Virus record (IMG/VR): IMGVR_UViG_3300009011_000001
Location: 184,575 to 248,574 of that record
Direction: 5' to 3' (one strand)
DNA: 64,000 nucleotides
Made by a program: the position numbers and the translations under genes. Shown piece after piece: positions 4,803-18,974 of the stretch. Within the stretch, counting starts at the first letter, position 1. Each line of letters begins with the position of its first letter. The notes under the pieces are model-generated. The model was not told the DNA's origin, made no database searches, and saw only the letters and a program-made list of their open reading frames with translations.

Positions 4803-5327
4803 ATGAAGGTCAATATCACGCTGACGCCACTGGCTAACGTATTGGCGGCTATCAACGCTGCTAACACCGCAACCAGCACCAACATCACCGAGTCGCAAGT
4901 TACTGCGGCTGCTCCAACCACCGCTGCCGGTACCGGCGGTCGTAACACCAGCGTTGTTCTGACCGGTATCGATGGTCAGGGCATCGAAGGTTCCCGTACC
5001 TTCTCGTACACCCGTCAATCTCTGGCTTCTGGTGCCGTGGCCTCCACCGCTCCTGCCAGCGTTCTGGTCGCTGAAGGCGACAATCAGGCTGCTTCGGTAA
5101 CCAAGGTTGCCACCGCTCTGGGCCTGTTGGCTTCGGAATTTGACGCCAGTGCCTACACCGCACCGGTCGACCAAACCACTCCTGGTACCGTGACCATCAC
5201 CGCAAAAACCAGCAGCTTGCTGTACGTCGGCAGCCGCGTTGTTCCTCTGAACTTCGCTGACGAAGACGTAGCCTTCGCTACCGTGGCTCCGGTGACTGAC
5301 GCCGACGGCTTCGACCCTGAAGCCTAA
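4803..5327 (+). CDS. Virion fibre-family structural protein (single-domain type)
   Basis: NT...G...Y-x-R-x-x-L domain, SLLYVG, C-terminal FATVAPVTDADGFDP. Confidence 0.8.
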   Translation: MKVNITLTPLANVLAAINAANTATSTNITESQVTAAAPTTAAGTGGRNTSVVLTGIDGQGIEGSRTFSYTRQSLASGAVASTAPASVLVAEGDNQAASVTKVATALGLLASEFDASAYTAPVDQTTPGTVTITAKTSSLLYVGSRVVPLNFADEDVAFATVAPVTDADGFDPEA

Positions 5328-5436
5328 GTAACAAACATAGGGCGGGGCTTCGGCCTCGCTTTATGCCGCAAGGTAACTAACTACAGAAAGCGGGTATCAG
5401 ATAGTAACCACAAACCCAAAAGCCCCTGGAGTAGTT

Positions 5437-6123
5437 ATGTCTATCAATCAAGAAAAAGCTCGCCCTTACGTTCCTGGTGTTATCGTTGTAAAGATCGTCA
5501 AGGTGCCGGAAATCCTGACAAAAAACGAAGTGCTACACAAAGCTTTCGTCAACCTTTTCGAAAACCAGTCCAGAAACATCGGTAGTTTCAATACTGCTAG
5601 TTATCTGCAACCAGTCGAATTGATGGCGGCGCTGCCAAAGCTCGTTACTGAAGATGGTCAGGAGACCGGGCTGGATATCGAAATCCCCGAATTGAAAAAC
5701 AAAGCGACCAGTCGCTTGCTCAGGGCAATCACCAAACTTTGCTTCGTTGGCCGCACGCCAACCGAAGTGAAACAGGATGGTTTCGATCTCCTCGCATACG
5801 AACTGTCAGAAGATCAAACCACCGTTATCGACGCCTGGAAGTTCACAGGGTTTACCTTCCCGAACGCGCTGCCCCACAGCAGCGATTACGACTCCAACAT
5901 GGCTTTCAACCCTGATGCTCCGGCAAGCATCAAGGTGCCGGTGATTGACAAGGATCTCGATTACAGCACCCTCAACCTGATCGGCAACATGCACAACAAC
6001 GACAATGTCCTGTTCGAAGCCATGAAGCAATTCGTGTTCGAACTCAAAAAGTACGGTAAAGACACCTCTGTCGTCGAAAACGACTTGGCGAACCTTCAGG
6101 GCGCTGGCAAGAAAGATGCGTGA
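5437..6123 (+). CDS. Hypothetical protein, paralog of 3860..4489
   Basis: YVPGVIVVKIV...AYELSEDQTTVIDAWKF; GGAG SD. Confidence 0.8.
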   Translation: MSINQEKARPYVPGVIVVKIVKVPEILTKNEVLHKAFVNLFENQSRNIGSFNTASYLQPVELMAALPKLVTEDGQETGLDIEIPELKNKATSRLLRAITKLCFVGRTPTEVKQDGFDLLAYELSEDQTTVIDAWKFTGFTFPNALPHSSDYDSNMAFNPDAPASIKVPVIDKDLDYSTLNLIGNMHNNDNVLFEAMKQFVFELKKYGKDTSVVENDLANLQGAGKKDA

Positions 6124-6607
6124 GTATCGCGTCAATCTCGTCGGCCTGAACGTCAGCAAGCTTGGCACGCCAATGCAGCCAGACGAACGCTGGGCCTCAG
6201 CAGCAAAAGCAGCGATCGAGTTAGGTAGCGCGATCATCGATCCTGCTGACTACAGCTACATGACGGTTGAAGAAATCGTTGAGTGTTTGATTGACTTCGA
6301 TTGGCAAAGAAAAGTCGGTATTGCGTATAAAGACAATATCGAAACCGCTCAGAAGTTGTTCGAACTCCTGAAGAAAGTAGATGGTGACGTAGAGCTCACC
6401 GTCCTCTTTACACCGACCGAAGGCATTTCCGAAGCCCACATCGCTGGCGTACTTAACGTCTGCCGTATTGATAGCTTCTCGGTTGAAAAACTGCTGGGTG
6501 AAGAAACAGGTATTCTGTACCTCAGTTTTGATTACGCCTCAGCAGGTGCGGCTGCGCAGTTGTTTGCAGCAGAAGTTGAAGAAGTTCTCAACACAGTCGT
6601 GCAATAA
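6116..6607 (+). CDS. Hypothetical protein
   Basis: Overlaps upstream stop; ends at a bidirectional hairpin. Confidence 0.75.
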   Translation: MREYRVNLVGLNVSKLGTPMQPDERWASAAKAAIELGSAIIDPADYSYMTVEEIVECLIDFDWQRKVGIAYKDNIETAQKLFELLKKVDGDVELTVLFTPTEGISEAHIAGVLNVCRIDSFSVEKLLGEETGILYLSFDYASAGAAAQLFAAEVEEVLNTVVQ

Positions 6608-6608
6608 G

Positions 6609-6647
6609 CAGCATACACCCCGGCCATTGCGGCCGGGGTGTATGCTG
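6609..6647. terminator. Bidirectional hairpin-TATGC element between convergent genes
   Basis: cagcatacaccccggcc-attgc-ggccggggtgtatgctg. Confidence 0.8.
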
Positions 6648-7193
6648 TCATGCTGGATCGAAACCAAGAGCATCGGTAACCGGAGCCACCGTTGCAAATG
6701 GAATTGGGGCATTGATGATGACCTGAGTCCCGTTCACGTAATAGAACGAGGTAGGTTTGATCTTCAATGTAATCTGCCCACCCGGCGCAGCTATGGTACT
6801 GTTGATGACATCTCGTTGCTCAAGAGCCAAACCGAACTTCGTGTTGATCGCCGACAAGGCTGAGAACACATCCGCATAATTCCCCGAAAGAGTCATGTCC
6901 TTCCCTTGGAACGGAACGGCAATATCTACTCGGTTATAGCGGAAGGTATACGTTCCCTTATAGCCCTTGCCGGCAACCGCGGTCATGAGCACAGTAGTGT
7001 TGAACAGCGTATCGCCAGAACTAACGGTGAGACCGCTGAACGTCACTTGGTTGGCCTGAATCGAAGTCCCTTGCTCTTTGTTAACTGCAGCAAGAATACC
7101 GACTGACCCAGCAACCGAGAACGGCGGCAGGTTGCTCAGGCCGTACATGGCCCACACATCCGCAGAACGGATTACAAACTTTGGGTTCGCCAT
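6648..7193 (-). CDS. Virion fibre-family structural protein (single-domain type)
   Basis: GYKGTYTFRYNRVDI; C-terminal FATVAPVTDALGFDPA. Confidence 0.8.
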   Translation of the reverse strand: MANPKFVIRSADVWAMYGLSNLPPFSVAGSVGILAAVNKEQGTSIQANQVTFSGLTVSSGDTLFNTTVLMTAVAGKGYKGTYTFRYNRVDIAVPFQGKDMTLSGNYADVFSALSAINTKFGLALEQRDVINSTIAAPGGQITLKIKPTSFYYVNGTQVIINAPIPFATVAPVTDALGFDPA

Positions 7194-7196
7194 GAC

Positions 7197-8291
7197 TTAC
7201 ACCTTAGGTTTGAGTTTGACGGTCAGACCAGCCAAGTTCGGCTGATACCACGGATTTCCAGCTGGCGTTTTAGGCGCAGAGAAGATCCGATCGTAGAACG
7301 TCTGAGCCGCCACCATAGGCGTAGTGGCGTCTGGCGTTTCTACACCACCTACAGTCAACGAGACGCCAAGGTTCCCTGTCGTTGCAGCAGTAACAGCCGA
7401 TCGACCTTTAACGTGCACACCGTTGATGACAGCGTTCTGAGGAATGGCAGATGCGTTATAGGTAATCGACGCAGGAGTCATTGCATCATCAGTAGTCAGC
7501 GTGGGTGTTGCGATACCTGTCGATGGGTTGCTGTAACCCGTCTTCAGTACGGACGTAGCATCACCAGCACTTGCAGTCCAGGTAGGAGCAGACACAGCAG
7601 ACACAGGCACCTTTTCAACAATCTGCGGTCCAAGGAACTGAGCCAGTTCACCACTCTCCCATTCGACGCAAAAGAAGTCACGCCAGAAGAATGTGTGGGT
7701 TTGGCCTTGCGTAATGTTGTACTGAGCATTGTGCCCAATGCCAACGCATACGCTCGTACCGCCAGGGCTTGCCGATACCGCAGTCGCCATCCAAGCCGGC
7801 ATAATGAGGTCGCTGAGTGGCTTACCGTCCACACGACGCTTAACCGTGTTGGTTGCAAAGTTGAGGTTGAACTCAACGTAGTACGGTTTATCGAACACAA
7901 AGCCCGGAATGTCTGCCTTGGTTACGATGTCGAACATGTTGGTGATTTCAATGACCGACGTCAAATGCACAAGACCGTTACCGGTGTAGGTCGAGCTCGG
8001 TTTTACCCTCACGCCAAACCAAAGGTTCGATGTAGGACCAACCGATGGCACCATCTCCTTAATGTCTGCAGACATCCGAAAACGGTAGTTACCGTAGTTG
8101 TATTGACCAGCACTAACGTCCATCCTCACCCACTTATCCGTGAAGATACTGACGGCCAAGTTGATTTCAGTGTTGACAATATACGTTTGCCACGGGCCGT
8201 TTGGGAACCGGGTTTGAAGAGGTGCAAGCGCACCAGCACCAGATGCGTTCGTGGTCGGGAGGTCCAAACCGTACATCGCATGAACTTTCAT
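7197..8291 (-). CDS. Putative fibre-tip/adhesin, beta-rich lectin-like protein
   Basis: Paralog of 8991 and 9971: YVEF...VDG, WRDF, LGPQ, P-x-G-x-x-W. Confidence 0.7.
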   Translation of the reverse strand: MKVHAMYGLDLPTTNASGAGALAPLQTRFPNGPWQTYIVNTEINLAVSIFTDKWVRMDVSAGQYNYGNYRFRMSADIKEMVPSVGPTSNLWFGVRVKPSSTYTGNGLVHLTSVIEITNMFDIVTKADIPGFVFDKPYYVEFNLNFATNTVKRRVDGKPLSDLIMPAWMATAVSASPGGTSVCVGIGHNAQYNITQGQTHTFFWRDFFCVEWESGELAQFLGPQIVEKVPVSAVSAPTWTASAGDATSVLKTGYSNPSTGIATPTLTTDDAMTPASITYNASAIPQNAVINGVHVKGRSAVTAATTGNLGVSLTVGGVETPDATTPMVAAQTFYDRIFSAPKTPAGNPWYQPNLAGLTVKLKPKV

Positions 8292-8302: not shown

Positions 8303-8980
8303 TTACGACCAGAGGATCGTATCAGTTTTGAACTGCGATGCAAGCGTAGGTGTGAAGCCTACTTGACAAGTATCGCCTGGCGTGAAGAAGTAGCTAGTAC
8401 TAGCAGCCGTGATCGTCACCTCAGGTGATCCCGCCGCGATGGGTTCGTCGATAATATCTGCTGTGGTGAGGGTCATCCCGGTAGCTGCGTTGATCGCCGG
8501 AATCAGCGCTTGGGTCGTCGCAGCATTTCCGATCACCACACCTGCCAGACTACCCATGCGGGCAAGACCCGTACGGTTGTAGTAGAAGTACATCGACCCC
8601 GACAACTGAGCAGCGGGCAATGCAGTCAGCAGCGCCCGTGAGTTGTAAATCTGATTAGGGTCGTTATACGCCTCTACTGCACCTAACGAGAAATGGGTGG
8701 CAGGCCGAACGGTCTTACTAACGGCCAGGATCATGTTCATCAGACCGGTCTTGCCATCCACGCCTTTTGGCAGCGCGACGTTATACGCCATCGCATAGCC
8801 GTTGAACGTTTTCATTGCCAAACTGTTAGGCGGCACGCCCATCACGTAGCCTTGAAACCTTCTCAAAGCAAGTTGTGCCGGCGGGGTAGTCAGTGCGTAG
8901 CCGTGAATCTCGGCTACGTTGACCGGTGTTGCCAAGCGGGTCAGGGCATATCCCTGAATACTTGCGGCATTAATTGGCAT
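8303..8980 (-). CDS. Virion fibre-family structural protein with N-terminal GY repeats
   Basis: Four IQGYAL/IHGYAL/FQGYVM/FNGYAM repeats, then the YYNRTGL domain. Confidence 0.75.
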   Translation of the reverse strand: MPINAASIQGYALTRLATPVNVAEIHGYALTTPPAQLALRRFQGYVMGVPPNSLAMKTFNGYAMAYNVALPKGVDGKTGLMNMILAVSKTVRPATHFSLGAVEAYNDPNQIYNSRALLTALPAAQLSGSMYFYYNRTGLARMGSLAGVVIGNAATTQALIPAINAATGMTLTTADIIDEPIAAGSPEVTITAASTSYFFTPGDTCQVGFTPTLASQFKTDTILWS

Positions 8981-8990: not shown

Positions 8991-9953
8991 TCAAACATCA
9001 GGCGTCAGGATCAGATCCGTGCCGTCGATGTTAGAACTATTCCAATAAGCCCCACCAGGTGCTCTATGGAACACACCCAGGCCCAGGTTATAGCTGTAGT
9101 TGGTGATTGGACAAACCGGCGTCAGACCTGCAAGTTCAGTGCCGGCCAGAGAAAGCTTAGCCGCAGCCTTTGCCGTAGCCGCACCTGTTGAACGAGCACC
9201 CATTACAAGTTCGATCGCATTCACGATAACGCCACCCGGCAAGTTAGCCTTGAGGCTAGCAGCAACTGGAGCGTTTGTGGCCGATGTAGCAATGTTGGCT
9301 GTTGGGATAGCGCCCGGCTCGCTCAGTGCGTTGAGCAGTGTGGAACTTCCCGGAGTGGTGGTCCAATCCAAAGCCGATGCGGAATCCAGAGTGATCGGGT
9401 AAGCGACCTGAGGACCCAATGGGCCGATTGGCAAACCTTGCGCAGCACCCTGGTCGTCGCAGATGTAAATGTCGCGCCAGTCGTAGCGGCCATTGAGACT
9501 ACCCTTGACTTCAAGCCCCAACAGCATGCTGCGGGTGGATGGTGCGCTGGTATTGGCCTGCTTAACCCCATTCACCCAGCGTTCAACCACACCAGACGCG
9601 ATGTCGTAAGAGAACTCCAGATACGACGTCGTGCCGGTAACGCCTATCAGCGAATCGAGCATGACGTACGTGCCGCCGAAGTAGATGATGCCCGCACCAC
9701 CGCGGGCGTTCAGAGTGGATCGGCAGCGGATACCGATCCAGATCTTACTTACCGGAGATACCAAGTACGGATCAAGCGGAATGCTTGTCCGCTCAGCCCC
9801 CGATGCGGTTGCGTTACTGACCAGCCATCCATTGACGATCGTGTTTTGTGCCGACAAGTCAGCGCCGCGAGTCATACCGTGGCTGGCGTAATTGATCCAG
9901 CTCGTGTCGTTCTGCGGCAGGTGGTCGAAACCAATGATTGCTCTAACTGCCAT
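8991..9953 (-). CDS. Putative fibre-tip/adhesin, lectin-like protein
   Basis: Start MAVRAIIGFD after GAGGAG; YLEFSYD...WVNG, WRDIYICDD, PLGPQ. Confidence 0.7.
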   Translation of the reverse strand: MAVRAIIGFDHLPQNDTSWINYASHGMTRGADLSAQNTIVNGWLVSNATASGAERTSIPLDPYLVSPVSKIWIGIRCRSTLNARGGAGIIYFGGTYVMLDSLIGVTGTTSYLEFSYDIASGVVERWVNGVKQANTSAPSTRSMLLGLEVKGSLNGRYDWRDIYICDDQGAAQGLPIGPLGPQVAYPITLDSASALDWTTTPGSSTLLNALSEPGAIPTANIATSATNAPVAASLKANLPGGVIVNAIELVMGARSTGAATAKAAAKLSLAGTELAGLTPVCPITNYSYNLGLGVFHRAPGGAYWNSSNIDGTDLILTPDV

Positions 9954-9970: not shown

Positions 9971-11014
9971 TCAGGAAATAGTGTCTGGAGTCAATTTGAC
10001 CGCAGCGGTGTCTACCTTCACCGTATCCCACGCCGTACCGTCTGGGGCTTTGGGGTAGAGTCCAACCAGAGCCGATGTCAGAGTCGTAGGCAGGACCGGA
10101 TACTTGATCGGAGACGAGGAGCCGTTCAGCCCAACTTCGATCTTACTGGTAGTCGGGCCAACACCAACGCTATTGCCAACCATGTTGATTTGCACGCCAT
10201 TGATCTTGGTGCCGGATGGTGCGGTGGTGCGCAGACTCATGTCCAGTGGCAATTTGCTACCTGGAGAGTTGGCTGTCGTTGTTGCTGGAGGAAGTGCGAG
10301 CAGAGCGTCCAGCAAAGTGCCGGTTCCCGTACTCGTCGTCCATTCGACCCCGACAGCGGAATCGAGATACACAGGGTACATCTTCTGATCGCCCAGTGGA
10401 GCGACCATCCCGTCACCTGCTACGTCATCCAAGACGTAGATGTCGCGCACCGCGTAGCGACCACCTGGAGAGCTGGCCAGACGAATACCAATACAGCCAT
10501 TGCCAGCCGCCCATTGCGCCTTGATGGCCGCCGACATCGCTGGCGGGGTGTACGAAGAGAGCGAAGTGCCGTTAACCTTGGTGGCCACGGTGCCTGCAAC
10601 AAAGTCGTAGGTCATTTCGACGTAATACTCAGTACCAACGCCGCTAAGCCATGGCGCACCACCACTGCCTGCCAAGAACAGATAGCAGCTAAGGTCGTTC
10701 GGCGTGACGTTGGAGTTGAGGTGTACGATCGAGTGGGCGTTGGCATACACTGCCAGCGTCTTGATCCGCATGCCGATAGTCAGCTTGTTCGGATTGACAG
10801 GCACGTAACCGTTCATGCTGAAAGGTACGATCTGGTCCGACAAGTTGGTCATCGCGCTGATCCAACCATCTTGGTCGACGCAGACACGGCTGATGTTGGT
10901 GCCTACAGACAGACCTGGGTGGCCAAACGTAGTCCACCAGTCCGAGAACGTCGCGCCGACGGCTGGGTTGGTAGTCTTCAGCGCATTGTCAGTTCCGATA
11001 ATTGCACGAAGCAT
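9971..11014 (-). CDS. Putative fibre-tip/adhesin, lectin-like protein
   Basis: Start MLRAIIGTD after GAGGAG; YYVEMTYD...VNG, VRDIYVLDD, PLGDQ. Confidence 0.7.
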   Translation of the reverse strand: MLRAIIGTDNALKTTNPAVGATFSDWWTTFGHPGLSVGTNISRVCVDQDGWISAMTNLSDQIVPFSMNGYVPVNPNKLTIGMRIKTLAVYANAHSIVHLNSNVTPNDLSCYLFLAGSGGAPWLSGVGTEYYVEMTYDFVAGTVATKVNGTSLSSYTPPAMSAAIKAQWAAGNGCIGIRLASSPGGRYAVRDIYVLDDVAGDGMVAPLGDQKMYPVYLDSAVGVEWTTSTGTGTLLDALLALPPATTTANSPGSKLPLDMSLRTTAPSGTKINGVQINMVGNSVGVGPTTSKIEVGLNGSSSPIKYPVLPTTLTSALVGLYPKAPDGTAWDTVKVDTAAVKLTPDTIS

Positions 11015-11018: not shown

Positions 11019-11399
11019 TCACTCCTCAGCCGCAGGTGGTGTTTCTTCAACCGGATCTTCTTCTACTGCTGGATCATTCCAGCAGAGATAGATAGTTCCC
11101 ACTGGAGCCACAGAACGCTCCGGGAAGCGCAACCCGAGGGCGTACTTGTAATGACTGAACGTAGGCAGGTTCGGATGGTTAAGTTCGTTGTAGACGACCT
11201 CAGCGCCATTCAGGCTATATTCCACGTCCTGTTCGTTCAGGTTCCACTTGGCTTTGTCATCTTGCGGACCACACTCAGCCAAGATCTGTGCAATCAAACG
11301 CTGATCGGGTTCGTTCAACACACCAACCGGAACGTCGTGCATCAACTCGCCCAGTTCGGTAAAGTCGGCACGGATCAAATAGTTCGGCCAATCTTGCAT
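11019..11399 (-). CDS. Stand-alone C-terminal domain of the fibre family
   Basis: Aligns to the C-half of the 12884 product (DFT...GVLN...LPT.S.YKY.L.LR...G..YL..NDP); GAGG SD. Confidence 0.75.
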   Translation of the reverse strand: MQDWPNYLIRADFTELGELMHDVPVGVLNEPDQRLIAQILAECGPQDDKAKWNLNEQDVEYSLNGAEVVYNELNHPNLPTFSHYKYALGLRFPERSVAPVGTIYLCWNDPAVEEDPVEETPPAAEE

Positions 11400-11917: not shown

Positions 11918-12826
11918 CTACACTTTGTATTGGAGGATAACCTTACCTGCGAACCAGCTGTTTGCCGCTGCCTGAATAACGACGGCAGTGTTGTACTTGG
12001 CAACGTTGGCTTCGGGTAAGGCAGCGGCCGGCAATGAGTAGCGGTACCAGGTGATGTTTACACAACCACCGGGCGTTGCAGCATCAGCGATCTGCCAGTT
12101 GTTATACGCGGTATTGACGTTCAGCCAATCAAGAATTTGCTGAAGTCCACTGTTCGCTCCGACGGTTGGGTTCCACACCGGCGGGATCGTCTGCAAGATT
12201 GCCGAAATAGCAGAGGCATCTTGAGCGTAGACGATGAACTCACCTTGAGGTTTGCGGCCCGGGGTTGTGAAATCATTACCACCCGGATAAAGACGCCCAG
12301 CCAGCGCACGGTTCGAGTCGGTGATCAACATGTTGAAAGGTCGAGGTCCGACAGTCCACGTCAACTGAACCGATCCCTTGTAGCACTGGCTAGTGGTCAC
12401 GACACTAACGGTCGTAGCCACACCCGACGAGAGCGCTGCCGTGTTTGCAATGTCGGAGGCAGGAATCTTGATACCGAATTTCTGAGCGAACGATGCCTTC
12501 CAAGTCGCCACTGGCAACTGGGTGGTGGCAAAGTAATCGTTCAGCGTTAACTTCATGTTGCGGTAGATCGTGCCGAGATCGATACGACGATACTTGACGG
12601 TCTGTTGACCGAGAACGGAACTACCGGGGGCAGCAGAGATCAGGATCGATGTGTCGTTCTTGTACGGATCGCCCGGCTGAACAGAGATCACCGCAGGGGC
12701 ACCGAATTGAACAGTCCCTTTTGGATAAACCGTTTTGAATCCAGGGTTGCTTGCTTCGATCAGATCGTAAAGAATGTCAATCTGATCGGCTTTGTAATCA
12801 GTTGCTGGCGTACCAGGATCAGCCAT
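11918..12826 (-). CDS. Virion fibre-family structural protein (two-domain type)
   Basis: YRRIDL, YPGGNDF, ends VILQYKV. Confidence 0.8.
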   Translation of the reverse strand: MADPGTPATDYKADQIDILYDLIEASNPGFKTVYPKGTVQFGAPAVISVQPGDPYKNDTSILISAAPGSSVLGQQTVKYRRIDLGTIYRNMKLTLNDYFATTQLPVATWKASFAQKFGIKIPASDIANTAALSSGVATTVSVVTTSQCYKGSVQLTWTVGPRPFNMLITDSNRALAGRLYPGGNDFTTPGRKPQGEFIVYAQDASAISAILQTIPPVWNPTVGANSGLQQILDWLNVNTAYNNWQIADAATPGGCVNITWYRYSLPAAALPEANVAKYNTAVVIQAAANSWFAGKVILQYKV

Positions 12827-12883: not shown

Positions 12884-13759
12884 TTACGCGTTCGCGTCGA
12901 ACGGATCGTTGTAGTGGAGGTACGACAGACCAGCAGGAGTCAGAACCGTTGGATCCAGGCGCAGAGCCAACACGTACTTGTACGCGGAGTTCGTTGGCAA
13001 GGATGCCGAGTTCAGGCCGTTGCTTACGACGGTGGCGCCAGCCACGTTCCAGGCGGTAGTGCCTGGAGTGTTTACCCACAGCGCTTTGCCGTTGCCGGTA
13101 TCGACTGCCAGCAACATGTCGCGGATCGCATTCGCTTGGGTGGTGTTGAGAACACCCGGAGCAAGTGCGGACAGCGTGTTGAAGTAGCTGGTGAAGTCGT
13201 ACGGGTACAGATACATCAGAGCAAACGTATCGGTATCGTTGGCGGTTGGGTAGTTCAGACCATTCAGGTTGGTCACGGTCACCAACTGATCCAGCGGAGC
13301 AGCGCCCTTAGTGATCGTCAGAGTTGCTTGGCCGATCCAACCCAGGCTGCCAGTTTTGGCCTGCAGAATAGCAGTCTGAGTATTGTCACCGTTATCGGTG
13401 AGAGCATTGTCTTCCAGATCGTCGGTAGTGAACTGAATGCCAGTCCAGTAGGCCAACATCGGCAACAGGCTGTGCACGGACGTGATGTTGTACGCCGCGC
13501 ACTTGAAGCCCGGAAGGTTGGCCGCAGTCAAAGAAGCCAGGTTCAGACGGTCGTACGCGATCGGTCGACTACCCTGATACGCTCCGCCGGCTTTTGCAGT
13601 GATGCGCAAACCGGTGTTGAGAGTAGTCAGCTGACCTTGCCACGTTCCAGTGAGCACCTGAGGAGCACCGTAAGTGAAGTCGTTCGGCGTGAACGCCGTC
13701 GAGTTGGCCGCATTGAGAGCCAGCAACACATCGATGAGGGATTGATTCATGTACGACAT
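12884..13759 (-). CDS. Virion fibre-family structural protein (two-domain type)
   Basis: YDRLNL, SLGWIG, LNGLNYP, YLHYND. Confidence 0.8.
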   Translation of the reverse strand: MSYMNQSLIDVLLALNAANSTAFTPNDFTYGAPQVLTGTWQGQLTTLNTGLRITAKAGGAYQGSRPIAYDRLNLASLTAANLPGFKCAAYNITSVHSLLPMLAYWTGIQFTTDDLEDNALTDNGDNTQTAILQAKTGSLGWIGQATLTITKGAAPLDQLVTVTNLNGLNYPTANDTDTFALMYLYPYDFTSYFNTLSALAPGVLNTTQANAIRDMLLAVDTGNGKALWVNTPGTTAWNVAGATVVSNGLNSASLPTNSAYKYVLALRLDPTVLTPAGLSYLHYNDPFDANA

Positions 13760-13770
13760 CGATTCTATCC

Positions 13771-14721
13771 TCAGACGTTGTAGTGGATGTAGTGTTGACC
13801 AGCACCGCAACCTTTAGCGGTATCCGCATCAGGAATGGTCAGGATCAGCACGCGGTTGTAGTACTTGGAGTTAGCCAGCGGTGCAGAATCGATACCGGCT
13901 TGAGTACTCAAGTCTACTACGCGGCCAGCCCACGACTGGTAGGCGTACGCCGGTGCAGCGTTGGTTGGATAAACCAGGCCTTTACCGTATAGACGGTTGA
14001 GTTCGTCGATGAAGCGGTTGCCGAAGCCGACCACTGCGTCGCCGATACCTTCCCAGCCGTTCGGGTAGCTGTTCCACTTGACGCCGGAGTTGATGAATGC
14101 AGTCCAGTCGATACCGAACGCCATGTTGCTGACGACAACCGGGTGCGATGGGTTGCTGAAGTCGTTGCCACCAGGGAAACGACGAGCGGTCAGGTTGGTC
14201 ACGGTGATCATGGATTCCAGATCCTGAGGAGCCGACTTCCATTTCAATGCAAACGAACCGACGTAGCCGAGACTGGTAGCTTTTGCGTTCACGGTCACGG
14301 TGGTGGTGTAGAACCCACCTTCCTGAGTGTTGCCGCGCAGGATGTTGACATCCGCTACGTCGTCGGTGGTCAGGTTCAGACCGTGCTTGGCGTTGATCAG
14401 CGGCAGCAGGTTGTAAACGGTAAACACAATCGAGTTGCTTGCGCTTTGGTTTGCCGAGTACTTGTTCATCTGTACCAGCACACCGCGGAGCAACTTACTC
14501 AGATCGATACGGCGATAGTTCATCGGCTTACGGCCGATATAGTCGCCACCGACAGAGATAACCGCGATGGTGGTGTTGAGATCGGATCGGCCAGGGATCG
14601 TAGCCGTTACCGGATTGTCCAGCTTTGCATTCGCTGGTGTCAGCGCAACTGGAAGATCCGGGTTAGCGGCATTAATGAGGTCGTAGACCAGTTCTGGCGA
14701 TGGCTTGTTGTATAAAGGCAT
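13771..14721 (-). CDS. Virion fibre-family structural protein (two-domain type)
   Basis: YRRIDL, SLGYVG, FPGGNDF, YIHYNV. Confidence 0.8.
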   Translation of the reverse strand: MPLYNKPSPELVYDLINAANPDLPVALTPANAKLDNPVTATIPGRSDLNTTIAVISVGGDYIGRKPMNYRRIDLSKLLRGVLVQMNKYSANQSASNSIVFTVYNLLPLINAKHGLNLTTDDVADVNILRGNTQEGGFYTTTVTVNAKATSLGYVGSFALKWKSAPQDLESMITVTNLTARRFPGGNDFSNPSHPVVVSNMAFGIDWTAFINSGVKWNSYPNGWEGIGDAVVGFGNRFIDELNRLYGKGLVYPTNAAPAYAYQSWAGRVVDLSTQAGIDSAPLANSKYYNRVLILTIPDADTAKGCGAGQHYIHYNV

Positions 14722-14726: not shown

Positions 14727-15521
14727 TTAAACCTCGTCAAGCAAGTTGTAATGGAAATACAAAGGGCCGAGGATCGATGAACTGACAACAGCCTGCTGAA
14801 CCACGACACGGTCGAAGTCCTTGTTGCAGTCGTCAATTGCAGAAGTCGGGTAGTCCACAATCGAACCTTGGAACCACGAAGGGATTCCCATGTACAGGCA
14901 GGCAGATTGCAAAGTGGTCCAGTCGGTATACGTCGCCGTGGCCGGATCAACCTTCAGTGCATCGCGCAGGCTCGTGAAGTCGATTCCCCACGTCAGCATC
15001 CTGCCAGATTTCTTGGCCAGAGCTGGATCGTCCGGATGCTTGAACAAATCAAGAAGGCGGATGTGGATGATCGATTCCAAAAGAGTCCGGCCGTACATCA
15101 ACTCGATTTCAACCGAGCCAATGAAGCCAAAACTTTCAGGCCGAGAAACGAGAGTCAGTGTCTTCGTCTCGTTCAGTTCCAGAGTGGGCGGCGTGAACGG
15201 TTCCAGATCTTCAGGAGTGATGAACAGACCCAACTGGCGGTTCACCATCTCGATCACCATTTCTGATGTAAACGGGACGGTGTTTCGCAGTTGAAGATCT
15301 TCCAGCGCTTCCGTCAGACTGATCCGTTTGTAGAGCAGGGTTTGCTGCCCAACATAAACGCGGCCAGGAACAGCCTCGATCGTGATAGCCGAGTTGAACT
15401 TCTCGTTCCCTTCGAGGACCACCGGTGCTTGAGGAGTGATGTTGATCAGCGAGAGCGGACGCTTGGGAACGTTCTTCTCGTTGGCTTCATTAAGAAGCCT
15501 TGTGATGCTGTTATCCATCAT
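14727..15521 (-). CDS. Virion fibre-family structural protein (two-domain type)
   Basis: YKRISL, TWGIDFT, YFHYN. Confidence 0.8.
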   Translation of the reverse strand: MMDNSITRLLNEANEKNVPKRPLSLINITPQAPVVLEGNEKFNSAITIEAVPGRVYVGQQTLLYKRISLTEALEDLQLRNTVPFTSEMVIEMVNRQLGLFITPEDLEPFTPPTLELNETKTLTLVSRPESFGFIGSVEIELMYGRTLLESIIHIRLLDLFKHPDDPALAKKSGRMLTWGIDFTSLRDALKVDPATATYTDWTTLQSACLYMGIPSWFQGSIVDYPTSAIDDCNKDFDRVVVQQAVVSSSILGPLYFHYNLLDEV

Positions 15522-15529: not shown

Positions 15530-16360
15530 TTAATCAACCGGAGGCAGGTTGTAATGGAGGACCAACGAACCGCTGAGACCAACTGAGTTCGTTTCGTCCA
15601 GAGCGACGATCACGACAAACGCGTATTCTGGATTGACGTCATCACGCCCTTCGGTAGTGCCGGAGTATGTGATGTTAGCGCCCAGCAGACTGTAACGCTG
15701 AGCAGCAGTCGTTGACCACGAATCGCCAGTAATCGTTGCCAATACTTGACGAACGATTTCCAGATGCGCCGTGCCGGCAGCAACGCCAGACAGATCAGAC
15801 GACACTGGGCTGAAGTCACGCCAGTACGAATACGCTGCGGCGTACGGTTTGTCGATACGACCTGTCGGATAGTTCAACCCATTGAGGTTGGTTACCGTCA
15901 GGAAGTCCCCCAGAGGCCGCGCACCTTGCGTTACCGTGAAATCGATAGTGCCGATCCAGTTACGGCTCGTCGCCTTCGCAGTGAGGGTCACAGTGCCGTT
16001 GCCGTCCACTGTACCTGCTGGACCATCGACGAAATCGTCAGTGGTGAAGTTCAGGCCGTGTAACTGGTTCAGACGGTTGGCCACATCCATGATCGTTTCA
16101 AGGTTGTAGCCCTTGATGGAAGTGGAAATCAGAGTAGCGAGATCCGCAAGATCCAAACGTTTGTACTTGATCGGCACAGTGCCGTCGTAAGTACTTTGAA
16201 TGTCCTTTGCGGTGATGGTCATGCTGGTGTTTTCACCAGACGGTCCCGTGGGGATGACCACCGGATTACCGAACACGTATTCGGCTTCAACCAAATCTAC
16301 GTTATTCTGAGTCTTAATTGCCTCGAGAATTGCCTCGAGTGGCAGCTGATACAAAGCCAT
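15530..16360 (-). CDS. Virion fibre-family structural protein (two-domain type)
   Basis: YKRLDL, SRNWIG, LNGLNYP, LHYN. Confidence 0.8.
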   Translation of the reverse strand: MALYQLPLEAILEAIKTQNNVDLVEAEYVFGNPVVIPTGPSGENTSMTITAKDIQSTYDGTVPIKYKRLDLADLATLISTSIKGYNLETIMDVANRLNQLHGLNFTTDDFVDGPAGTVDGNGTVTLTAKATSRNWIGTIDFTVTQGARPLGDFLTVTNLNGLNYPTGRIDKPYAAAYSYWRDFSPVSSDLSGVAAGTAHLEIVRQVLATITGDSWSTTAAQRYSLLGANITYSGTTEGRDDVNPEYAFVVIVALDETNSVGLSGSLVLHYNLPPVD

Positions 16361-16371: not shown

Positions 16372-17178
16372 CTACGACCGGTTGAAGTGGAAGTACGCAT
16401 CGCCGTTATACGTCGCGGCATTTACGTCCTTTTGAATGATGACGTGCGAATACGCTTTGTTGGCCCGAGGCACGTCTTTTGTAGCCTGAAGGAATACCTT
16501 CATGTCCGCGCCGCTTGTACCGACGGGGAAGTCAGGAAAACCGTTACGGGTCATGATGTCTTTGACCTTGGTTGGGTTGAGCCAGCCTTGGCCGTAAACC
16601 TGCAGATCTTTTTGATCGTCAGTGAAGTCGATGCCCCACGTATCCATGGACAGCGAGTGCTTCCCGGCAACAACAGGATCTGGGAACTTCAGCACATTCA
16701 GGGTGGTATTCGGAATCATGCTCACCAGCGTCGGACGAACCCGAACAAACTGAATGATGATGCGGCCTTCATACGCCAGAGAATTCGGCGAGATAACGAA
16801 CTGAAGGTTAGCCTGCTCATTACCGCCCAGCCAAACAATCGACTGATCGATAATGTCTTCTGGCTGCAGATTCAAGCCAGTCTTCTGGTTAACGATTGGG
16901 AGCAACCGCACCAGACTGTTTTGCCCAACCTCACGCATCAATGGGCGAATGTCCCGGAAGATGACAGACAGGTTGAGACGACGATATTCGAATTTAGCGT
17001 AGCCTTCGTACTCTTCGTTGTCGTACATCGTGACAACTGGGAGATGCGTCAGACCACCTGCAACAGGCTTGGGCTTGCCGTAATACAGATCACCTACATC
17101 GAGGGGTACGGGTAAATCGTTGTTGGCATTGATAAGATCTACCAATGCTTTTTCGGATGTTCCTTTTAGAAGGAGCAT
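16372..17178 (-). CDS. Virion fibre-family structural protein (two-domain type)
   Basis: YRRLNL, SLAYEG, TWGIDFT, YFHFN; AGGAG SD before MLLLKG. Confidence 0.8.
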   Translation of the reverse strand: MLLLKGTSEKALVDLINANNDLPVPLDVGDLYYGKPKPVAGGLTHLPVVTMYDNEEYEGYAKFEYRRLNLSVIFRDIRPLMREVGQNSLVRLLPIVNQKTGLNLQPEDIIDQSIVWLGGNEQANLQFVISPNSLAYEGRIIIQFVRVRPTLVSMIPNTTLNVLKFPDPVVAGKHSLSMDTWGIDFTDDQKDLQVYGQGWLNPTKVKDIMTRNGFPDFPVGTSGADMKVFLQATKDVPRANKAYSHVIIQKDVNAATYNGDAYFHFNRS

Positions 17179-17215
17179 GAAGTATCTCCTGGGTGAGCCA
17201 CTTACCGACATAGGT

Positions 17216-17257: not shown

Positions 17258-17274
17258 GGGGTATCGCTGCAGCC

Positions 17275-17820
17275 TTAAACGAGAGGAGGAGCGGCGTAAG
17301 TCAGGCCGTCCATTTCGACGTCAGGGATCGCGACAGCCAGATCGATGTCTTCGGCTTTCACGGTGATCGTGATGGAGCCAGTGAAGATCAGCGAGTCAGC
17401 TTTGACGACGATTTGAACGTCATGCTCTTCGTTCAGGGTGCCGGTGAACTCAGGCAGGTCGGCGTCGACGAAGTCGTCGGTAGTCAGGTTGACTTTCAGA
17501 CGGCTGTTGAATTCAGGGATCAGGTCGGCGATCTTGGTGGAGTCGCCAATGCTGAAGACCAGGTCGCGATCGCCGCCGGAGGCAATGAATGCCGCACCGA
17601 CGTCGGTGCCCAGGTGTGGACGAACGTAGCGAATAACGCGATCGTTCTTATAGCCCGAACCAGGAGCAGCGGTCAGAGTGAGGCTGGTGTTTTTGCCAGT
17701 TGCTTCAACAACAGGAAGACCCGCCCAGGTGAAAGAAGCCTCGGTGAAGCCTTTGCCAGTCTTGGCATTGACCATATCGAGAATAATCTGCTTGGGCGCT
17801 TTGGTTAAATCGTTGGCCAT
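17275..17820 (-). CDS. Virion fibre-family structural protein (single-domain type; probably abundant)
   Basis: YVRPHL, SLIFTG, C-terminal AIPDVEMDGLTY; strongly biased codons; flanked by hairpins. Confidence 0.8.
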   Translation of the reverse strand: MANDLTKAPKQIILDMVNAKTGKGFTEASFTWAGLPVVEATGKNTSLTLTAAPGSGYKNDRVIRYVRPHLGTDVGAAFIASGGDRDLVFSIGDSTKIADLIPEFNSRLKVNLTTDDFVDADLPEFTGTLNEEHDVQIVVKADSLIFTGSITITVKAEDIDLAVAIPDVEMDGLTYAAPPLV

Positions 17821-17921
17821 GGAAGTAGCTCCGAGGGTGGCGTAAGGAAACAGTTAAACGTGACACATAGAATTGAAGGTTAAAACATACAGGGAGTGGC
17901 AATGCCACTCCCTGTATGCTA

Positions 17922-18461
17922 TCAGTCGTCTAATGGCGGTGCTTCATAGACCAGGCCGTCCAGCACAGGGTCTGGAATTGCAACTACCAAATCGTTGTCT
18001 GCCCGCTTGAGCTTGACAAGCAAGTTGCCGAGATAGACCATCGAAATCGGCAATACCTGGATCTGCACATCAACGCTGACATCGTCCTCGCCCAACACGG
18101 GAAGTCCGGAATCGATGATGCGATCAGGTTTGAGGTTGATGCTCAGCCGTTCGTTAAGCTCAGGAAGTAAATCACTGATCTTTAACTTGCCGTCAGGATC
18201 AAAGTTCAGATCCGTGACGCCGACCTCTACAAACTCGGTCAGAGGAATACGGTTGTAATAAAAGCTTTGACTGCCTCGATACATGAAGCCAGGTCGGGCA
18301 GTACCTACCAGCAACGTGTTACGATCGATTTCCTCGGTGGGTACGAAGACGTTAGGATTACCGAAGGTAATCATCACGTTGCTTAGAGGTTTGTTGTTGT
18401 TCCAGCGACGGATCAGATCGATCACTACATCAATTTCGTCGCGAGTATAATCCGTGGCCAT
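17922..18461 (-). CDS. Virion fibre-family structural protein (single-domain type)
   Basis: YNRIPL, SMVYLG, C-terminal AIPDPVLDGLVY. Confidence 0.8.
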   Translation of the reverse strand: MATDYTRDEIDVVIDLIRRWNNNKPLSNVMITFGNPNVFVPTEEIDRNTLLVGTARPGFMYRGSQSFYYNRIPLTEFVEVGVTDLNFDPDGKLKISDLLPELNERLSINLKPDRIIDSGLPVLGEDDVSVDVQIQVLPISMVYLGNLLVKLKRADNDLVVAIPDPVLDGLVYEAPPLDD

Positions 18462-18479
18462 ACTGAAGATCTCGTGAGG

Positions 18480-18974
18480 TTAGGATCGATCCAATCCGTT
18501 GAGGATATTGTTCGGGAACGCGACTGACAATTCCTCGAGTTCTTGTTCGACCAGATAGACAGTCAATGTGCCTATCCAGACTAAACAATTACCCACTACA
18601 GTAATCGTACAGACGTTCTCGTCAATGATGAATGTCTCGACTTCACTGGCGTAAAGAATGAAGTTGTATTTTCGTCTCAGGGCATTGAGCACACCGGCGC
18701 CGATGATCTCCTTGACATCGACCGATACCTGCCCCACGCCAAGGTCTGTAAATGCTTGTTGCATATCCAGACGTTTGTAATGATAGTCGTAAGAACCTTC
18801 GACGTCCTTGGCGTGAGCAGTCACGCGGATCATCGTGTTGTTGCCGTTCTCAAACTCCCCAGCAGTTGGGCCAGAGAAGGTCAGGTCCTTTCTTGCAAGC
18901 GTTACATTGTGCTGCTCCAGGTAGCTCTGGTTTGCCGACACGATAAGGTCTGTCAGCATTTCTTCATTAGTCAT
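18480..18974 (-). CDS. Virion fibre-family structural protein (single-domain type)
   Basis: YKRLDM, CLVWIG, C-terminal AFPNNILNGL. Confidence 0.8.
   Translation of the reverse strand: MTNEEMLTDLIVSANQSYLEQHNVTLARKDLTFSGPTAGEFENGNNTMIRVTAHAKDVEGSYDYHYKRLDMQQAFTDLGVGQVSVDVKEIIGAGVLNALRRKYNFILYASEVETFIIDENVCTITVVGNCLVWIGTLTVYLVEQELEELSVAFPNNILNGLDRS

What the first reader, a model, noticed from the sequence alone, without database searches (positions are those of the whole stretch)
4803..18974. Pilus-like modular fibre kit: many paralogs sharing a domain and a C-terminal linker motif
Seen: a shared ~140-aa domain (FG.P...NT...Y-x-R-x-x-L...IN...G..L...D...S-x-x-[WY]-x-G) followed by a motif like L..A[IF]P...[LM][DN]G[LF]. 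Single-domain members stop just after this motif (4803, 6648, 11415, 17275, 17922, 18480). Two-domain members continue into a DFT...[YL]xHYN domain (11918-16372). Three lectin-like genes are interleaved, and further members lie at 37384-39996. Inference: subunits chain head-to-tail by donating the terminal motif to the next subunit, analogous to donor-strand complementation, and build segmented fibres with exchangeable tips instead of trimeric fibres.
Basis: partly seen in the sequence, partly recalled or inferred. Interest (0 to 1): 0.65.

Follow-up and report, generated by a model that had tools for sequence, protein, structure and literature searches.

The report
DUF7941 baseplate-fibre gene array, soil chimallivirus

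Summary
Sixteen genes in the window match Pfam PF25613 (DUF7941). Thirteen lie in 4803-18974 and three in 37384-39996. Seven have an N-terminal domain (NTD), a linker and a C-terminal domain (CTD). Seven stop just after the linker motif. Two have an NTD but no linker. One further gene is CTD-only. Three interleaved genes are paralogs whose AlphaFold2 model has a ConA-like lectin/glucanase jelly roll (Z 13.4).

The genome is a complete 248.6-kb chimallivirus, with chimallin, a PhiKZ-type capsid protein and PhiKZ-type RNA polymerase subunits.

That model rests on AlphaFold 3 dimers, filaments of purified gp22, and a PhiKZ gp127-gp126 fit into peripheral baseplate density. So the kind is already known.

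Evidence from this window is indirect. The linker motif has the lowest model confidence yet is among the best conserved blocks. The only solved fold match is PhiKZ gp127 in the baseplate. There is no pilin-like fold, and ordinary fibre-anchor genes are also present, so "instead of trimeric fibres" fails.

New details:
- The same ordered cassette, gene for gene, occurs in 10 related phages.
- One member is split by an old, conserved gene fission.
- The lectin-like proteins are separate genes that share an N-terminal motif.

The parts
18480..18974 (-). DUF7941 short member (NTD + linker motif), 164 aa. First gene of the minus-strand array.
   Evidence: PF25613 6.8e-18. NTD and linker HMM hits. 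Best window match of Goslar gp23, 1e-10.
17922..18461 (-). DUF7941 short member, 179 aa. Ends with the motif LDGLVY followed by 7 residues.
   Evidence: PF25613 2.5e-23. 35% identical to 17275-17820.
17275..17820 (-). DUF7941 short member, 181 aa. Ends with the motif MDGLTY followed by 6 residues.
   Evidence: PF25613 7e-25. 18 orthologs have an almost invariant tail, D..L....I.....GL.Y..P.
16372..17211 (-). DUF7941 full-length member (NTD + linker + CTD).
   Evidence: PF25613 1.3e-43, profile positions 1-275. Domain map.
15530..16360 (-). DUF7941 full-length member, 276 aa.
   Evidence: PF25613 1e-47.
14727..15521 (-). DUF7941 full-length member, 264 aa.
   Evidence: PF25613 1.5e-35.
13771..14721 (-). 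DUF7941 full-length member, 316 aa.
   Evidence: PF25613 4e-38.
12884..13762 (-). DUF7941 full-length member and the best family match. The public collection calls the start at 13750 (288 aa).
   Evidence: PF25613 9e-51. AF2 model with pLDDT 88.8: NTD 1-150, low-confidence linker 151-178, CTD 180-288. Its only significant fold match in the PDB is PhiKZ gp127.
11918..12826 (-). DUF7941 full-length member.
   Evidence: PF25613 5.4e-29.
11415..11909 (-). NTD + linker half of a split DUF7941 gene. It ends at LLGF and a TAA stop.
   Evidence: PF25613 1.7e-12. The genome HMM match spans this gene and the next with one TAA inside. Junction read. The split is conserved in all related loci inspected. 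The stop is also present in an independent soil metagenome.
11019..11399 (-). CTD-only half of the split gene. It has its own GAGGA ribosome-binding site and an ATG at 11399.
   Evidence: 36.5% identical to the CTD of 12884-13810, 5e-15. phrog_1037 positions 183-285. Junction.
9971..11014 (-). Lectin-like protein, 347 aa: a ConA-like jelly roll (residues 1-213) plus a second beta-sandwich.
   Evidence: No Pfam hit. 34 homologs in jumbo-phage contigs. AF2 pLDDT 89. VIA-align Z 13.4 to the sialidase BT_1020 module, and Z 11 to 13 to GH131, calreticulin, peanut lectin and a mycobacteriophage baseplate protein.
8991..9953 (-). Lectin-like paralog.
   Evidence: BLASTP 3e-26 to 3e-32 against 9971-11050. 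Lectin-family HMM 2e-90.
8303..8980 (-). DUF7941 NTD without a linker motif. It is preceded by about 70 residues holding four repeats of a GY[AV][LM] motif (two 17 aa apart by pattern match).
   Evidence: PF25613 4.9e-13 on residues 106-220. No linker HMM hit. Repeats and their orthologs.
7197..8291 (-). Lectin-like paralog, 364 aa. It is the most variable gene of the cassette among relatives.
   Evidence: BLASTP 1e-8 to 4e-11 against the other two lectin-like genes. 21-68% identity to orthologs.
6648..7193 (-). DUF7941 short member with a 30-residue N-terminal extension. The extension copies the N-terminal motif of the lectin-like protein at 7197-8291.
   Evidence: PF25613 1.3e-18 on residues 33-161. 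N-terminal comparison.
4803..5327 (+). DUF7941 short member on the opposite strand, 174 aa.
   Evidence: PF25613 2.5e-17. 33% identical to 6648-7193.
39043..39996 (-). DUF7941 protein with two tandem NTDs and no linker motif. It lies next to the wedge-protein gene.
   Evidence: PF25613 with two stretches. NTD HMM at residues 68-150 and 177-318.
38444..39034 (-). DUF7941 short member whose tail carries two copies of the linker motif.
   Evidence: PF25613 7e-17. Two linker HMM hits, at 151-172 and 176-195.
37384..38424 (-). DUF7941 full-length member, 346 aa.
   Evidence: PF25613 1.4e-15, profile positions 5-274.
36490..37374 (-). Homolog of Goslar gp32 / PhiKZ gp139 (DUF7208). In those phages this protein forms the spokes between the inner and peripheral baseplate and lies next to PhiKZ gp127.
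   Evidence: PF23838 5.4e-80. BLASTP 8e-38 to Goslar gp32 and 3e-46 to PhiKZ gp139. Role taken from the paper.
40013..42316 (-). Homolog of Goslar gp35 / PhiKZ gp128, an upper wedge protein of the inner baseplate. In PhiKZ, gp127 and gp126 follow this gene directly.
   Evidence: BLASTP 2e-123 to Goslar gp35 and 6e-107 to PhiKZ gp128. Role.

Best explanation
The region is the DUF7941 (PF25613) gene set of a complete 248.6-kb uncultivated soil or rhizosphere chimallivirus. These are late virion proteins of the outer baseplate.

Each has a globular N-terminal domain (the acceptor). Most also carry a conserved but intrinsically unstructured linker motif, roughly D-L-x-x-h-[IV]-x-x-x-x-L-x-G-[LF]-x-[YF]-P, with or without a globular C-terminal domain (the donor).

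The most likely mechanism is the one proposed for Goslar and PhiKZ. The linker, plus the CTD where present, of one protomer docks on the NTD of the next, so the proteins form flexible head-to-tail heteropolymers. These are rooted at the peripheral baseplate, near the gp32/gp139 spokes.

The three-gene cluster at 37384-39996 is probably the baseplate-proximal part. The large array at 6648-18974 probably supplies shaft subunits. The interleaved ConA-like lectin/glucanase-fold proteins probably recognise or cut host surface glycans.

Shown here: family membership, domain architecture, genome type, synteny with baseplate genes, and conservation of the cassette. Inferred from homologs: presence in the virion, filament formation and the baseplate anchor. 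Pure inference: which subunit binds which, and how the lectin-like proteins attach.
For: - Family: 16 genes are over the Pfam cut-off. They also match PHROG 1037/2935, 'virion structural protein'.
- Solved relative: profile A1 hits PDB 9xqd PHIKZ127 at 2.7e-16 over its full length. The AF2 model's only significant Foldseek match is that chain, in the outer peripheral region of the phiKZ baseplate (E 8e-4, TM 0.59).
- Architecture: NTD at pLDDT about 90, linker at 54-76, CTD above 90, pTM 0.54.
- Linker: the block at residues 161-170 has the lowest pLDDT (54) but conservation 0.74, tied for second highest of 29 blocks. In 18 orthologs of the short member its key positions (D, L, G, L, Y, P) are invariant. 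The same motif is readable in Goslar gp22, gp23, gp31, gp33 and gp34.
- Genome type: PhiKZ_MCP 2.6e-125, chimallin phrog_4795 7e-36, and homologs of PhiKZ non-virion RNA polymerase subunits.
- Synteny: the second cluster lies between homologs of gp35/gp128 and gp32/gp139.
- PhiKZ gp126 is NTD-only and gp127 is full-length. That gives a minimal donor-acceptor pair, like the classes found here.
- Published evidence for the mechanism in homologs.
- Each paralog has its own ortholog, in the same order, in 10 related phage loci. The paralogs are therefore old and not redundant.
Against: - No experiment or confident prediction exists for this phage's own proteins.
- The published mechanism is a preprint. 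It rests largely on AlphaFold 3 models plus negative-stain images of one protein.
- In PhiKZ only a two-subunit stub is seen, so long filaments may not be general.
- The lectin-like proteins have neither an NTD nor the linker motif, so their link to the fibres rests on gene neighbourhood only.
- PHROGs files the family under 'head and packaging'.
- DUF7941 is also reported in some Spiroplasma proteins, so the domain is not strictly tied to chimallivirus baseplates.
Confidence: 0.68

Rival explanations
1. The proteins are fixed decorations of the peripheral baseplate. Each of the 16 sits at its own defined site, or forms only short stubs such as the PhiKZ gp127-gp126 pair. The linker motif then serves for pairwise docking within a finite complex, not for open-ended polymerisation.
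For: - In the solved PhiKZ baseplate only one gp127 NTD is modelled, and the preprint fits just one gp127-gp126 dimer.
- PhiKZ gp126 is NTD-only, which would cap the chain after two units.
- The strict one-to-one orthology and fixed gene order across 10 relatives fit a defined finite architecture better than a random polymer.
- Two window members have an NTD but no donor motif.
Against: - Goslar gp22 alone forms filaments hundreds of nm long.
- Goslar gp22 and gp23 are present at about 580 and 2,140 copies per virion, far more than six-fold baseplate sites can hold.
- Seven window members carry both acceptor and donor parts, so nothing in the sequence stops chain growth.
Confidence: 0.2
2. The linker motif folds back on the protein's own NTD, or holds the NTD and CTD together in cis. 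The proteins would then be monomeric or conventionally oligomeric virion components, and the array would only reflect diversification of a receptor-binding or structural protein.
For:
- In full-length members the linker is long enough (about 28 residues) to reach the protein's own NTD.
- NTD and CTD are always found together or encoded side by side.
Against: - The AF2 monomer model does not dock the linker confidently: pLDDT 54-76 and pTM 0.54, meaning no fixed arrangement of the two domains.
- Short members keep the motif with no CTD.
- AlphaFold 3 and the PhiKZ density favour docking in trans in homologs.
Confidence: 0.08
3. They are head or injected internal proteins, as the PHROG category 'head and packaging' suggests, and not external fibres.
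For: - PHROG 1037, 2935 and 3589 are filed under 'head and packaging'.
- Some PhiKZ records call neighbouring genes 'structural head protein'.
Against: [quoted passage not shown]
- The genes lie among baseplate and fibre genes.
- The PHROG category is a generic label for virion proteins found by mass spectrometry.
Confidence: 0.03

Closest known systems
Goslar DUF7941 proteins gp22, gp23, gp31, gp33, gp34, gp86, gp91-93 and gp161: the 'DUF7941 fibre cloud' (Basu et al., bioRxiv 10.64898/2026.04.21.720040)
   Same: - Same Pfam family and the same NTD-linker-CTD plan.
- Both have full-length (gp22-like) and NTD+linker (gp23-like) forms.
- The linker motif is the same.
- Both lie next to gp32 and gp35 baseplate genes in a chimallivirus genome.
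- Carbohydrate-related modules are associated with the set.
   Different: - Here there are 16 genes (18 HMM matches) against 10 in Goslar by the same scan.
- No member is fused to a carbohydrate-binding, hydrolase or LRR domain. Three separate lectin-fold genes are interleaved instead.
- One member is split into an NTD+linker gene and a CTD gene.
- One member has two NTDs and one has two linker motifs.
- Nothing is known experimentally for this phage.
PhiKZ gp127-gp126 at the outer peripheral baseplate (PDB 9xqd)
   Same: - Homologous: profile E-value 2.7e-16, and the NTD fold matches at TM 0.59.
- gp127 is full-length and gp126 is NTD-only, which mirrors the donor and acceptor-only classes here.
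- The genes follow the gp128 homolog, as the 37384-39996 cluster does.
   Different: PhiKZ has only 3 matches and a two-subunit stub. This phage has a long array, which suggests much longer or more numerous chains.
Chaperone-usher pili (type 1 and P pili), which assemble by donor-strand complementation and exchange
   Same: The logic is the same: many paralogous subunits in one operon, each accepting a peptide from its neighbour. This gives an ordered, non-covalent, head-to-tail fibre with an adhesin or lectin at the tip and cap subunits that cannot extend the chain. (This description is from established knowledge, not tested here.)
   Different: - No Ig-like pilin fold.
- The NTD is predicted as a complete fold without a partner.
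- The donated piece is a C-terminal linker rather than an N-terminal extension.
- No chaperone or usher appeared among the neighbouring genes scanned.
- Assembly would occur in the cytoplasm of an infected cell. This is an analogy only.
Concanavalin A-like lectin/glucanase fold proteins: sialidase carbohydrate-binding modules, GH131, calreticulin, legume lectins, PL7/PL14 alginate lyases and a mycobacteriophage Douge baseplate protein
   Same: Residues 1-213 of the 9971-11014 model align with these at Z 10.4-13.4, rmsd 3.0-3.8 A, over 160-180 residues.
   Different: - Sequence identity is 5-13%, and there is no Pfam match.
- No sugar-binding or catalytic residues were identified.
- The second domain (residues 215-347) was not searched on its own.

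Membership tests
DUF7941 (Pfam PF25613) | Sequence match to the family HMM above the curated 27-bit cut-off. | tested here: met
   16 window genes are over the cut-off, with a best E-value of 9e-51. The CTD-only gene alone is below it (19.2 bits), but it scores together with its upstream half (73 bits with one TAA inside).
DUF7941 (Pfam PF25613) | Architecture of a globular NTD, a disordered linker and a globular CTD, or NTD + linker only (as described for Goslar gp22 and gp23). | tested here: met
   The AF2 model has an NTD at pLDDT about 90, a linker at 54-76 and a CTD above 90. The domain HMM map gives 7 full, 7 short, 2 NTD-only and 1 CTD-only members.
DUF7941 (Pfam PF25613) | Encoded by a chimallivirus, next to peripheral-baseplate genes. 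| tested here: met
   Chimallin, PhiKZ-type capsid protein and RNA polymerase subunit homologs are present. gp32/gp139 and gp35/gp128 homologs flank the second cluster.
DUF7941 (Pfam PF25613) | Head-to-tail self-association through linker-to-NTD docking, forming filaments. | tested here: inconclusive
   The one complex prediction allowed gave no verdict. The only other evidence is indirect: a conserved, low-confidence linker. Filament formation itself needs purified protein.
DUF7941 (Pfam PF25613) | Present in purified virions in high copy number. | not testable with these tools
   The phage is uncultivated and known only from rhizosphere and soil metagenomes. Virion presence is known only for homologs.
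Chaperone-usher pilins (donor-strand complementation) | An incomplete Ig-like subunit fold that is completed by a strand from the neighbouring subunit. | tested here: not met
   The Foldseek PDB search with the full-length model found no pilin or Ig-like match. Its only significant hit is PhiKZ gp127. The NTD is predicted confidently without a partner.
Chaperone-usher pilins (donor-strand complementation) | The donor is an N-terminal extension, and a periplasmic chaperone and an outer-membrane usher are encoded alongside. | tested here: not met
   The conserved donor-like motif lies C-terminal to the domain. Pfam and PHROG scans of the neighbouring genes gave no chaperone or usher family.
Concanavalin A-like lectin/glucanase fold (the three lectin-like genes) | A curved two-sheet beta jelly roll of about 200 residues. 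| tested here: met
   VIA-align gives Z 13.4 (5mqs_A) and Z 12.9 (8q28_A). The top 50 hits shown are mostly lectins, carbohydrate-binding modules, glucanases or lyases of this fold. Foldseek E-values are about 2e-5.
Concanavalin A-like lectin/glucanase fold (the three lectin-like genes) | Demonstrable sugar-binding or catalytic site. | not tested
   No residue-level comparison was made. A shared fold does not show function.
Chimalliviridae (nucleus-forming jumbo phages) | Chimallin shell protein, PhiKZ-type major capsid protein and split multisubunit RNA polymerases. | tested here: met
   phrog_4795 nuclear shell protein at 7e-36, genome positions 68830-70791. PF25620 at 2.6e-125. tblastn hits to PhiKZ gp55, gp68, gp71, gp73 and gp74 at 1e-29 to 1e-60.

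The most novel reading that the evidence does not exclude
This phage clade may build ordered, possibly branched, heteropolymeric fibres using two peptide-docking codes.

1. The known DUF7941 linker-to-NTD code, which here includes a bivalent donor (38444-39034, two linker motifs), a bivalent acceptor (39043-39996, two NTDs) and a conserved split subunit whose CTD is a free polypeptide.
2. A second code, an N-terminal motif [RKH]-x-h-x-G-[YFW]-[DA]. It opens nearly all lectin-like proteins examined. It also recurs, often at a 17-residue spacing, at the N-terminus of the DUF7941 proteins that lie between them (four GY[AV][LM] repeats in 8303-8980; one copy in 6648-7193).

Through the second code, free-standing lectin/glucanase tips would be recruited non-covalently and could be swapped, rather than fused as in Goslar.
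Probability: 0.15. Interest if true: 0.6.

Novelty: new member of a known kind. Interest (0 to 1): 0.4.

Why it matters
DUF7941 fibres are a very recent idea about how nucleus-forming jumbo phages find their hosts. They would be non-trimeric, self-polymerising and possibly microns long.

This window shows that soil chimalliviruses carry a much larger set than the cultured models. By the same scan the counts are 13 to 25 matches, against 10 in Goslar and 3 in PhiKZ. The set has a fixed gene order that is conserved gene for gene.

That argues for a defined assembly order rather than a random "cloud". It also offers natural variants for dissecting the docking rule:
- short members,
- full-length members,
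- NTD-only members,
- a member with two NTDs,
- a member with two linker motifs,
- a CTD-only protein.

For host-range work, the separate lectin-fold genes at the variable end of the cassette are the likely specificity determinants.

This shows the scan can recover real biology, but the mechanism itself is not new.

Tried and rejected
- **Complex prediction.** Two copies of the short member 17275-17820 were folded with a 20-row alignment. The result was NO VERDICT: scores 0.36, 0.48 and 0.27 against a mark of 0.42, with controls at 0.00. It counts neither for nor against binding. No further folding jobs were available.
- **Megablast of 11000-19000 against the phage collection.** No match, so there is no close cultured relative. 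The closest by protein is Burkholderia phage FLC9, at 47%.
- **Finding chimallin.** PhiKZ chimallin used as a query against the genome found nothing. It did not match the two 625-aa window ORFs. The real chimallin was found by synteny and PHROG outside the window.
- **Stop-codon readthrough or frameshifting at the split gene.** Rejected. The stop is TAA in all nine junctions inspected (window plus eight related loci). A ribosome-binding site and an ATG follow it. In five relatives the CTD gene is in another frame or lies behind further stops.
- **Sequencing error at that stop.** Rejected. An independent soil metagenome has the same stop.
- **Likeness between the linker motif and the lectin N-terminal motif.** The linker HMM does not hit 8303-8980 or the lectin-like proteins, so any likeness stays an impression.
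- **Sigma-70 promoter and terminator scan of the array.** Counts were no higher than in shuffled sequence, so it was uninformative. These phages use their own polymerases.
- **RNA evidence.** No RNA run holds the sequence.
- **Large representative-protein search.** Not used, because the family was already identified.

Full report
**1. What is in the sequence**

Between 4803 and 18974 there is one plus-strand gene (4803-5327) and a tightly packed minus-strand array from 18974 down to 6648.

Pfam PF25613 (DUF7941) matches thirteen of these genes above its curated cut-off, with E-values from 5e-13 to 9e-51. It also matches three more at 37384-38424, 38444-39034 and 39043-39996. A six-frame scan of the whole genome gives 18 matches, 17 of them in the window, and none in 14 control genomes. 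BLASTP among the paralogs is significant down to 1e-35.

After them comes a linker that ends in L-x-G-[LF].

- 8303-8980 and 39043-39996 have the domain but not the linker motif.
- 39043-39996 has two tandem copies of the domain.
- 11019-11405 is a CTD-only member.

HMMs built from the alignment give these classes:

| Class | Genes (start coordinate) |
|---|---|
| Full (NTD + linker + CTD), 7 genes | 11918, 12884, 13771, 14727, 15530, 16372, 37384 |
| Short (NTD + linker), 7 genes | 4803, 6648, 11415, 17275, 17922, 18480, 38444 |
| NTD without linker, 2 genes | 8303, 39043 |
| CTD-only, 1 gene | 11019 |

The short member at 38444 carries two linker motifs.

**2. What genome this is**

The window is the last 64 kb of a 248,574-bp IMG/VR virus record with direct terminal repeats. 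It has no near relative among deposited phages. The genome encodes:
- a PhiKZ-type major capsid protein (PF25620, 2.6e-125);
- the nuclear shell protein chimallin (phrog_4795, 7e-36, at genome positions 68830-70791);
- homologs of the PhiKZ RNA polymerase subunits gp55, gp68, gp71, gp73 and gp74, the DNA polymerase and a helicase.

It is therefore a chimallivirus. Near-identical DNA occurs in a rhizosphere metagenome, which may be its source, and in an independent soil metagenome. The closest cultured relative for these proteins is Burkholderia phage FLC9 at 47% identity. SPN3US-like Erwinia and Salmonella jumbo phages follow at about 36%.

**3. The family is known, and so is the proposed mechanism**

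A full-text search for DUF7941 found the Goslar cryo-EM preprint, Basu et al., bioRxiv 10.64898/2026.04.21.720040. It reports the following:
- gp22 (full-length) and gp23 (NTD + linker) are among the most abundant virion proteins, at about 580 and 2,140 copies.
- Goslar has ten DUF7941 proteins, three of them fused to carbohydrate-binding, glycoside hydrolase or LRR domains.
- AlphaFold 3 predicts head-to-tail dimers in which one protomer's disordered linker (plus its CTD) docks on the next protomer's NTD.
- Purified gp22 forms filaments hundreds of nm long in negative stain.
- A PhiKZ gp127-gp126 dimer fits unexplained density next to the outermost gp139 dimer of the peripheral baseplate.

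The authors propose a "DUF7941 fibre cloud" for host recognition.

**4. Evidence from this window that bears on the mechanism**

(a) The profile of the sixteen paralogs hits PDB 9xqd chain PHIKZ127 over its full length (2.7e-16).

(b) An AlphaFold2 model of 12884-13750 (48-row alignment, pLDDT 88.8) has a confident NTD (residues 1-150), a low-confidence linker (151-178, pLDDT 54-76) and a confident CTD (180-288). Its pTM is only 0.54, so the two domains have no fixed mutual position.

(c) The only significant Foldseek match of that model in the PDB is the gp127 NTD in the outer peripheral region of the phiKZ baseplate (E 8e-4, TM 0.59). No pilin, Ig-like or fibre fold appears.

(d) The ten-residue block holding L-N-G-L-N-Y-P has the lowest pLDDT (54). 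Yet its column conservation (0.74) is tied for second highest of 29 blocks. In 18 orthologs of the short member 17275-17820 the tail motif's key positions (D, L, G, L, Y, P) are invariant. A conserved segment that is not structured in the monomer is what a docking peptide looks like.

(e) The same motif can be read in Goslar gp22, gp23, gp31, gp33 and gp34.

(f) Synteny supports a baseplate location:
- 40013-42316 is the gp35/gp128 wedge protein (2e-123 and 6e-107).
- 42347-45172 is gp36/gp129.
- 36490-37374 is the gp32/gp139 spoke protein (DUF7208, 5e-80).
- In PhiKZ, gp127 and gp126 follow gp128 directly.

The three-gene cluster at 37384-39996 is therefore the positional equivalent of the PhiKZ pair seen in the baseplate. 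PhiKZ gp126 is NTD-only, so an acceptor-only cap is already part of the known system.

**5. What the "lectin-like" genes are**

The genes at 7197-8291, 8991-9953 and 9971-11014 are paralogs with no Pfam family. They have 34 homologs, nearly all from metagenomic assemblies, several on contigs of 220-290 kb.

The AF2 model of 9971-11014 (pLDDT 89) has a ConA-like lectin/glucanase jelly roll in residues 1-213. VIA-align gives:
- Z 13.4 to the non-catalytic module of sialidase BT_1020;
- Z 12.9 to 8q28;
- Z 10.4-12.6 to GH131, calreticulin, peanut lectin, alginate lyases and a mycobacteriophage baseplate protein.

Foldseek agrees. A second beta-sandwich (residues 215-347) was not searched alone. 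Glycan binding or cleavage is an inference.

**6. New details not in the preprint**

*Conserved order.* The whole cassette occurs in the same order in ten related IMG/VR loci. Each window gene has its own ortholog at the same position, at 25-77% identity. The paralogs are therefore old and non-redundant, which argues for a defined assembly order or several distinct fibres. The end holding 7197-8291 and 6648-7193 is the most variable, and relatives insert extra lectin-like genes there.

*Copy numbers.* By one method the counts are 18 matches here, 25, 18 and 13 in three relatives, 10 in Goslar and 3 in PhiKZ.

*A split gene.* 11415-11909 ends at L-L-G-F followed by TAA. After 15 nucleotides that hold a GAGGA site, an ATG opens a 126-residue CTD-only gene.
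- The same split occurs in all eight related loci inspected: the same L-x-G-F end, TAA, a ribosome-binding site, and a CTD that starts with a conserved (D)WPNYL motif followed by DF[TS].
- In five of them the CTD gene lies in another frame or behind further stops. This is therefore an old gene fission, not readthrough or decay.
- The stop is also present in the independent soil sample.
- The fission point is exactly where the short members end.

*A shared N-terminal motif.* Nearly all lectin-like proteins examined start with [RKH]-x-h-x-G-[YFW]-[DA].
- A related motif (GY[AV][LM]) occurs four times in the N-terminal extension of 8303-8980, two of them 17 residues apart by pattern match, and once in that of 6648-7193. 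Orthologs carry two to four copies, often 17 residues apart.
- Its density is 1.1-1.6 per 1,000 residues in these classes, against 0.2 elsewhere.
- In the AF2 model the motif is the first strand of the jelly roll.
- Its meaning is unexplained. A second docking code is a low-probability guess.

**7.

- Donor-strand complementation is an analogy only. There is no incomplete Ig fold, and the donor is C-terminal.
- "Instead of trimeric fibres" is not supported. 54128-54772 and 55541-56506 carry the N-terminal anchor domain shared by PhiKZ gp131 and Goslar gp25 and gp29. Other baseplate and fibre genes follow them.
- The tips here are not fused to the chain subunits.

**8. Limits**

- The single complex prediction allowed gave no verdict and is not used as evidence.
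- No RNA or virion data exist for this phage.
- The mechanism rests on a preprint about homologs that are 25-35% identical.
- DUF7941 is also reported in a few Spiroplasma proteins (PMC13375240). The domain is therefore not exclusive to chimalliviruses.

**9. Verdict**

This is a real, well-defined feature and a new, enlarged member of a kind described in 2026. Confidence that it belongs to the DUF7941 family is about 0.98. Confidence that it works by head-to-tail chaining at the baseplate periphery is about 0.68. Interest is moderate, at 0.4. The mechanism is already proposed, but three features give concrete handles for testing it: the ordered 16-gene cassette, the conserved gene fission and the free-standing lectin-fold genes.

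Noticed in passing
window 6609-6646: A perfect 38-nt palindromic hairpin (predicted fold -41 kcal/mol for the 59-nt stretch around it) lies between the convergent gene ends 6116-6607(+) and 6648-7193(-). At least seven copies at 87-95% identity are scattered over the genome. The same element is shared by other contigs of the two metagenomes. It may be a bidirectional terminator or a phage-specific regulatory repeat.
   Followed up: partly
window 8303-8980 (residues 1-70), 6648-7193 (residues 1-30), and the N-termini of 7197-8291, 8991-9953 and 9971-11014: The motif [RKH]-x-h-x-G-[YFW]-[DA] opens nearly all lectin-like proteins in the window and the relatives examined. A related motif (GY[AV][LM]) is repeated up to four times, often 17 residues apart, in the N-terminal extensions of the DUF7941 proteins encoded between them. 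Enrichment is 5- to 8-fold. Its function is unknown.
   Followed up: partly
window 3860-4489(+) and 5437-6123(+): Two genes flanking the plus-strand DUF7941 gene are paralogs of each other (BLASTP about 1e-6 to 2e-8). Neither has a Pfam or PHROG match.
   Followed up: no
genome G000:C1:157197-157661 (L003:2623-3087, outside the window): A 154-aa ORF gives a weak DUF7941 NTD-like match: PF25613 at 20.6 bits, below the cut-off, and phrog_1037 at 4e-6. It may be a seventeenth, divergent member, far from the two clusters.
   Followed up: partly
window 54128-54772(-) and 55541-56506(-): Two short proteins (214 and 321 aa) consist mostly of the N-terminal anchor domain shared by PhiKZ gp131 and Goslar gp25 and gp29 (phrog_2163, 13857 and 23008, a tail-fibre family). 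They have little or no distal part, unlike their 680-770-aa homologs.
   Followed up: no
window 15530-16360 (residues 84-142) and 17275-17820 (residues 111-153): There are sub-threshold Pfam hits to the Spiralin domain (PF05215, E 0.005 and 0.016). Separately, a 2026 paper reports DUF7941 in Spaid-like proteins of Spiroplasma (PMC13375240). This may be a coincidence or a distant link between the phage domain and Spiroplasma surface proteins.
   Followed up: no
loci L011-L014 (IMG/VR relatives of 172-315 kb): More distant relatives carry DUF7941 proteins fused to about 200 or more extra C-terminal residues (365-542 aa). They also carry lectin-like proteins of 558-597 aa, some with two matches to the lectin-like family HMM. 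So fused and unfused tip arrangements both exist within the clade.
   Followed up: no
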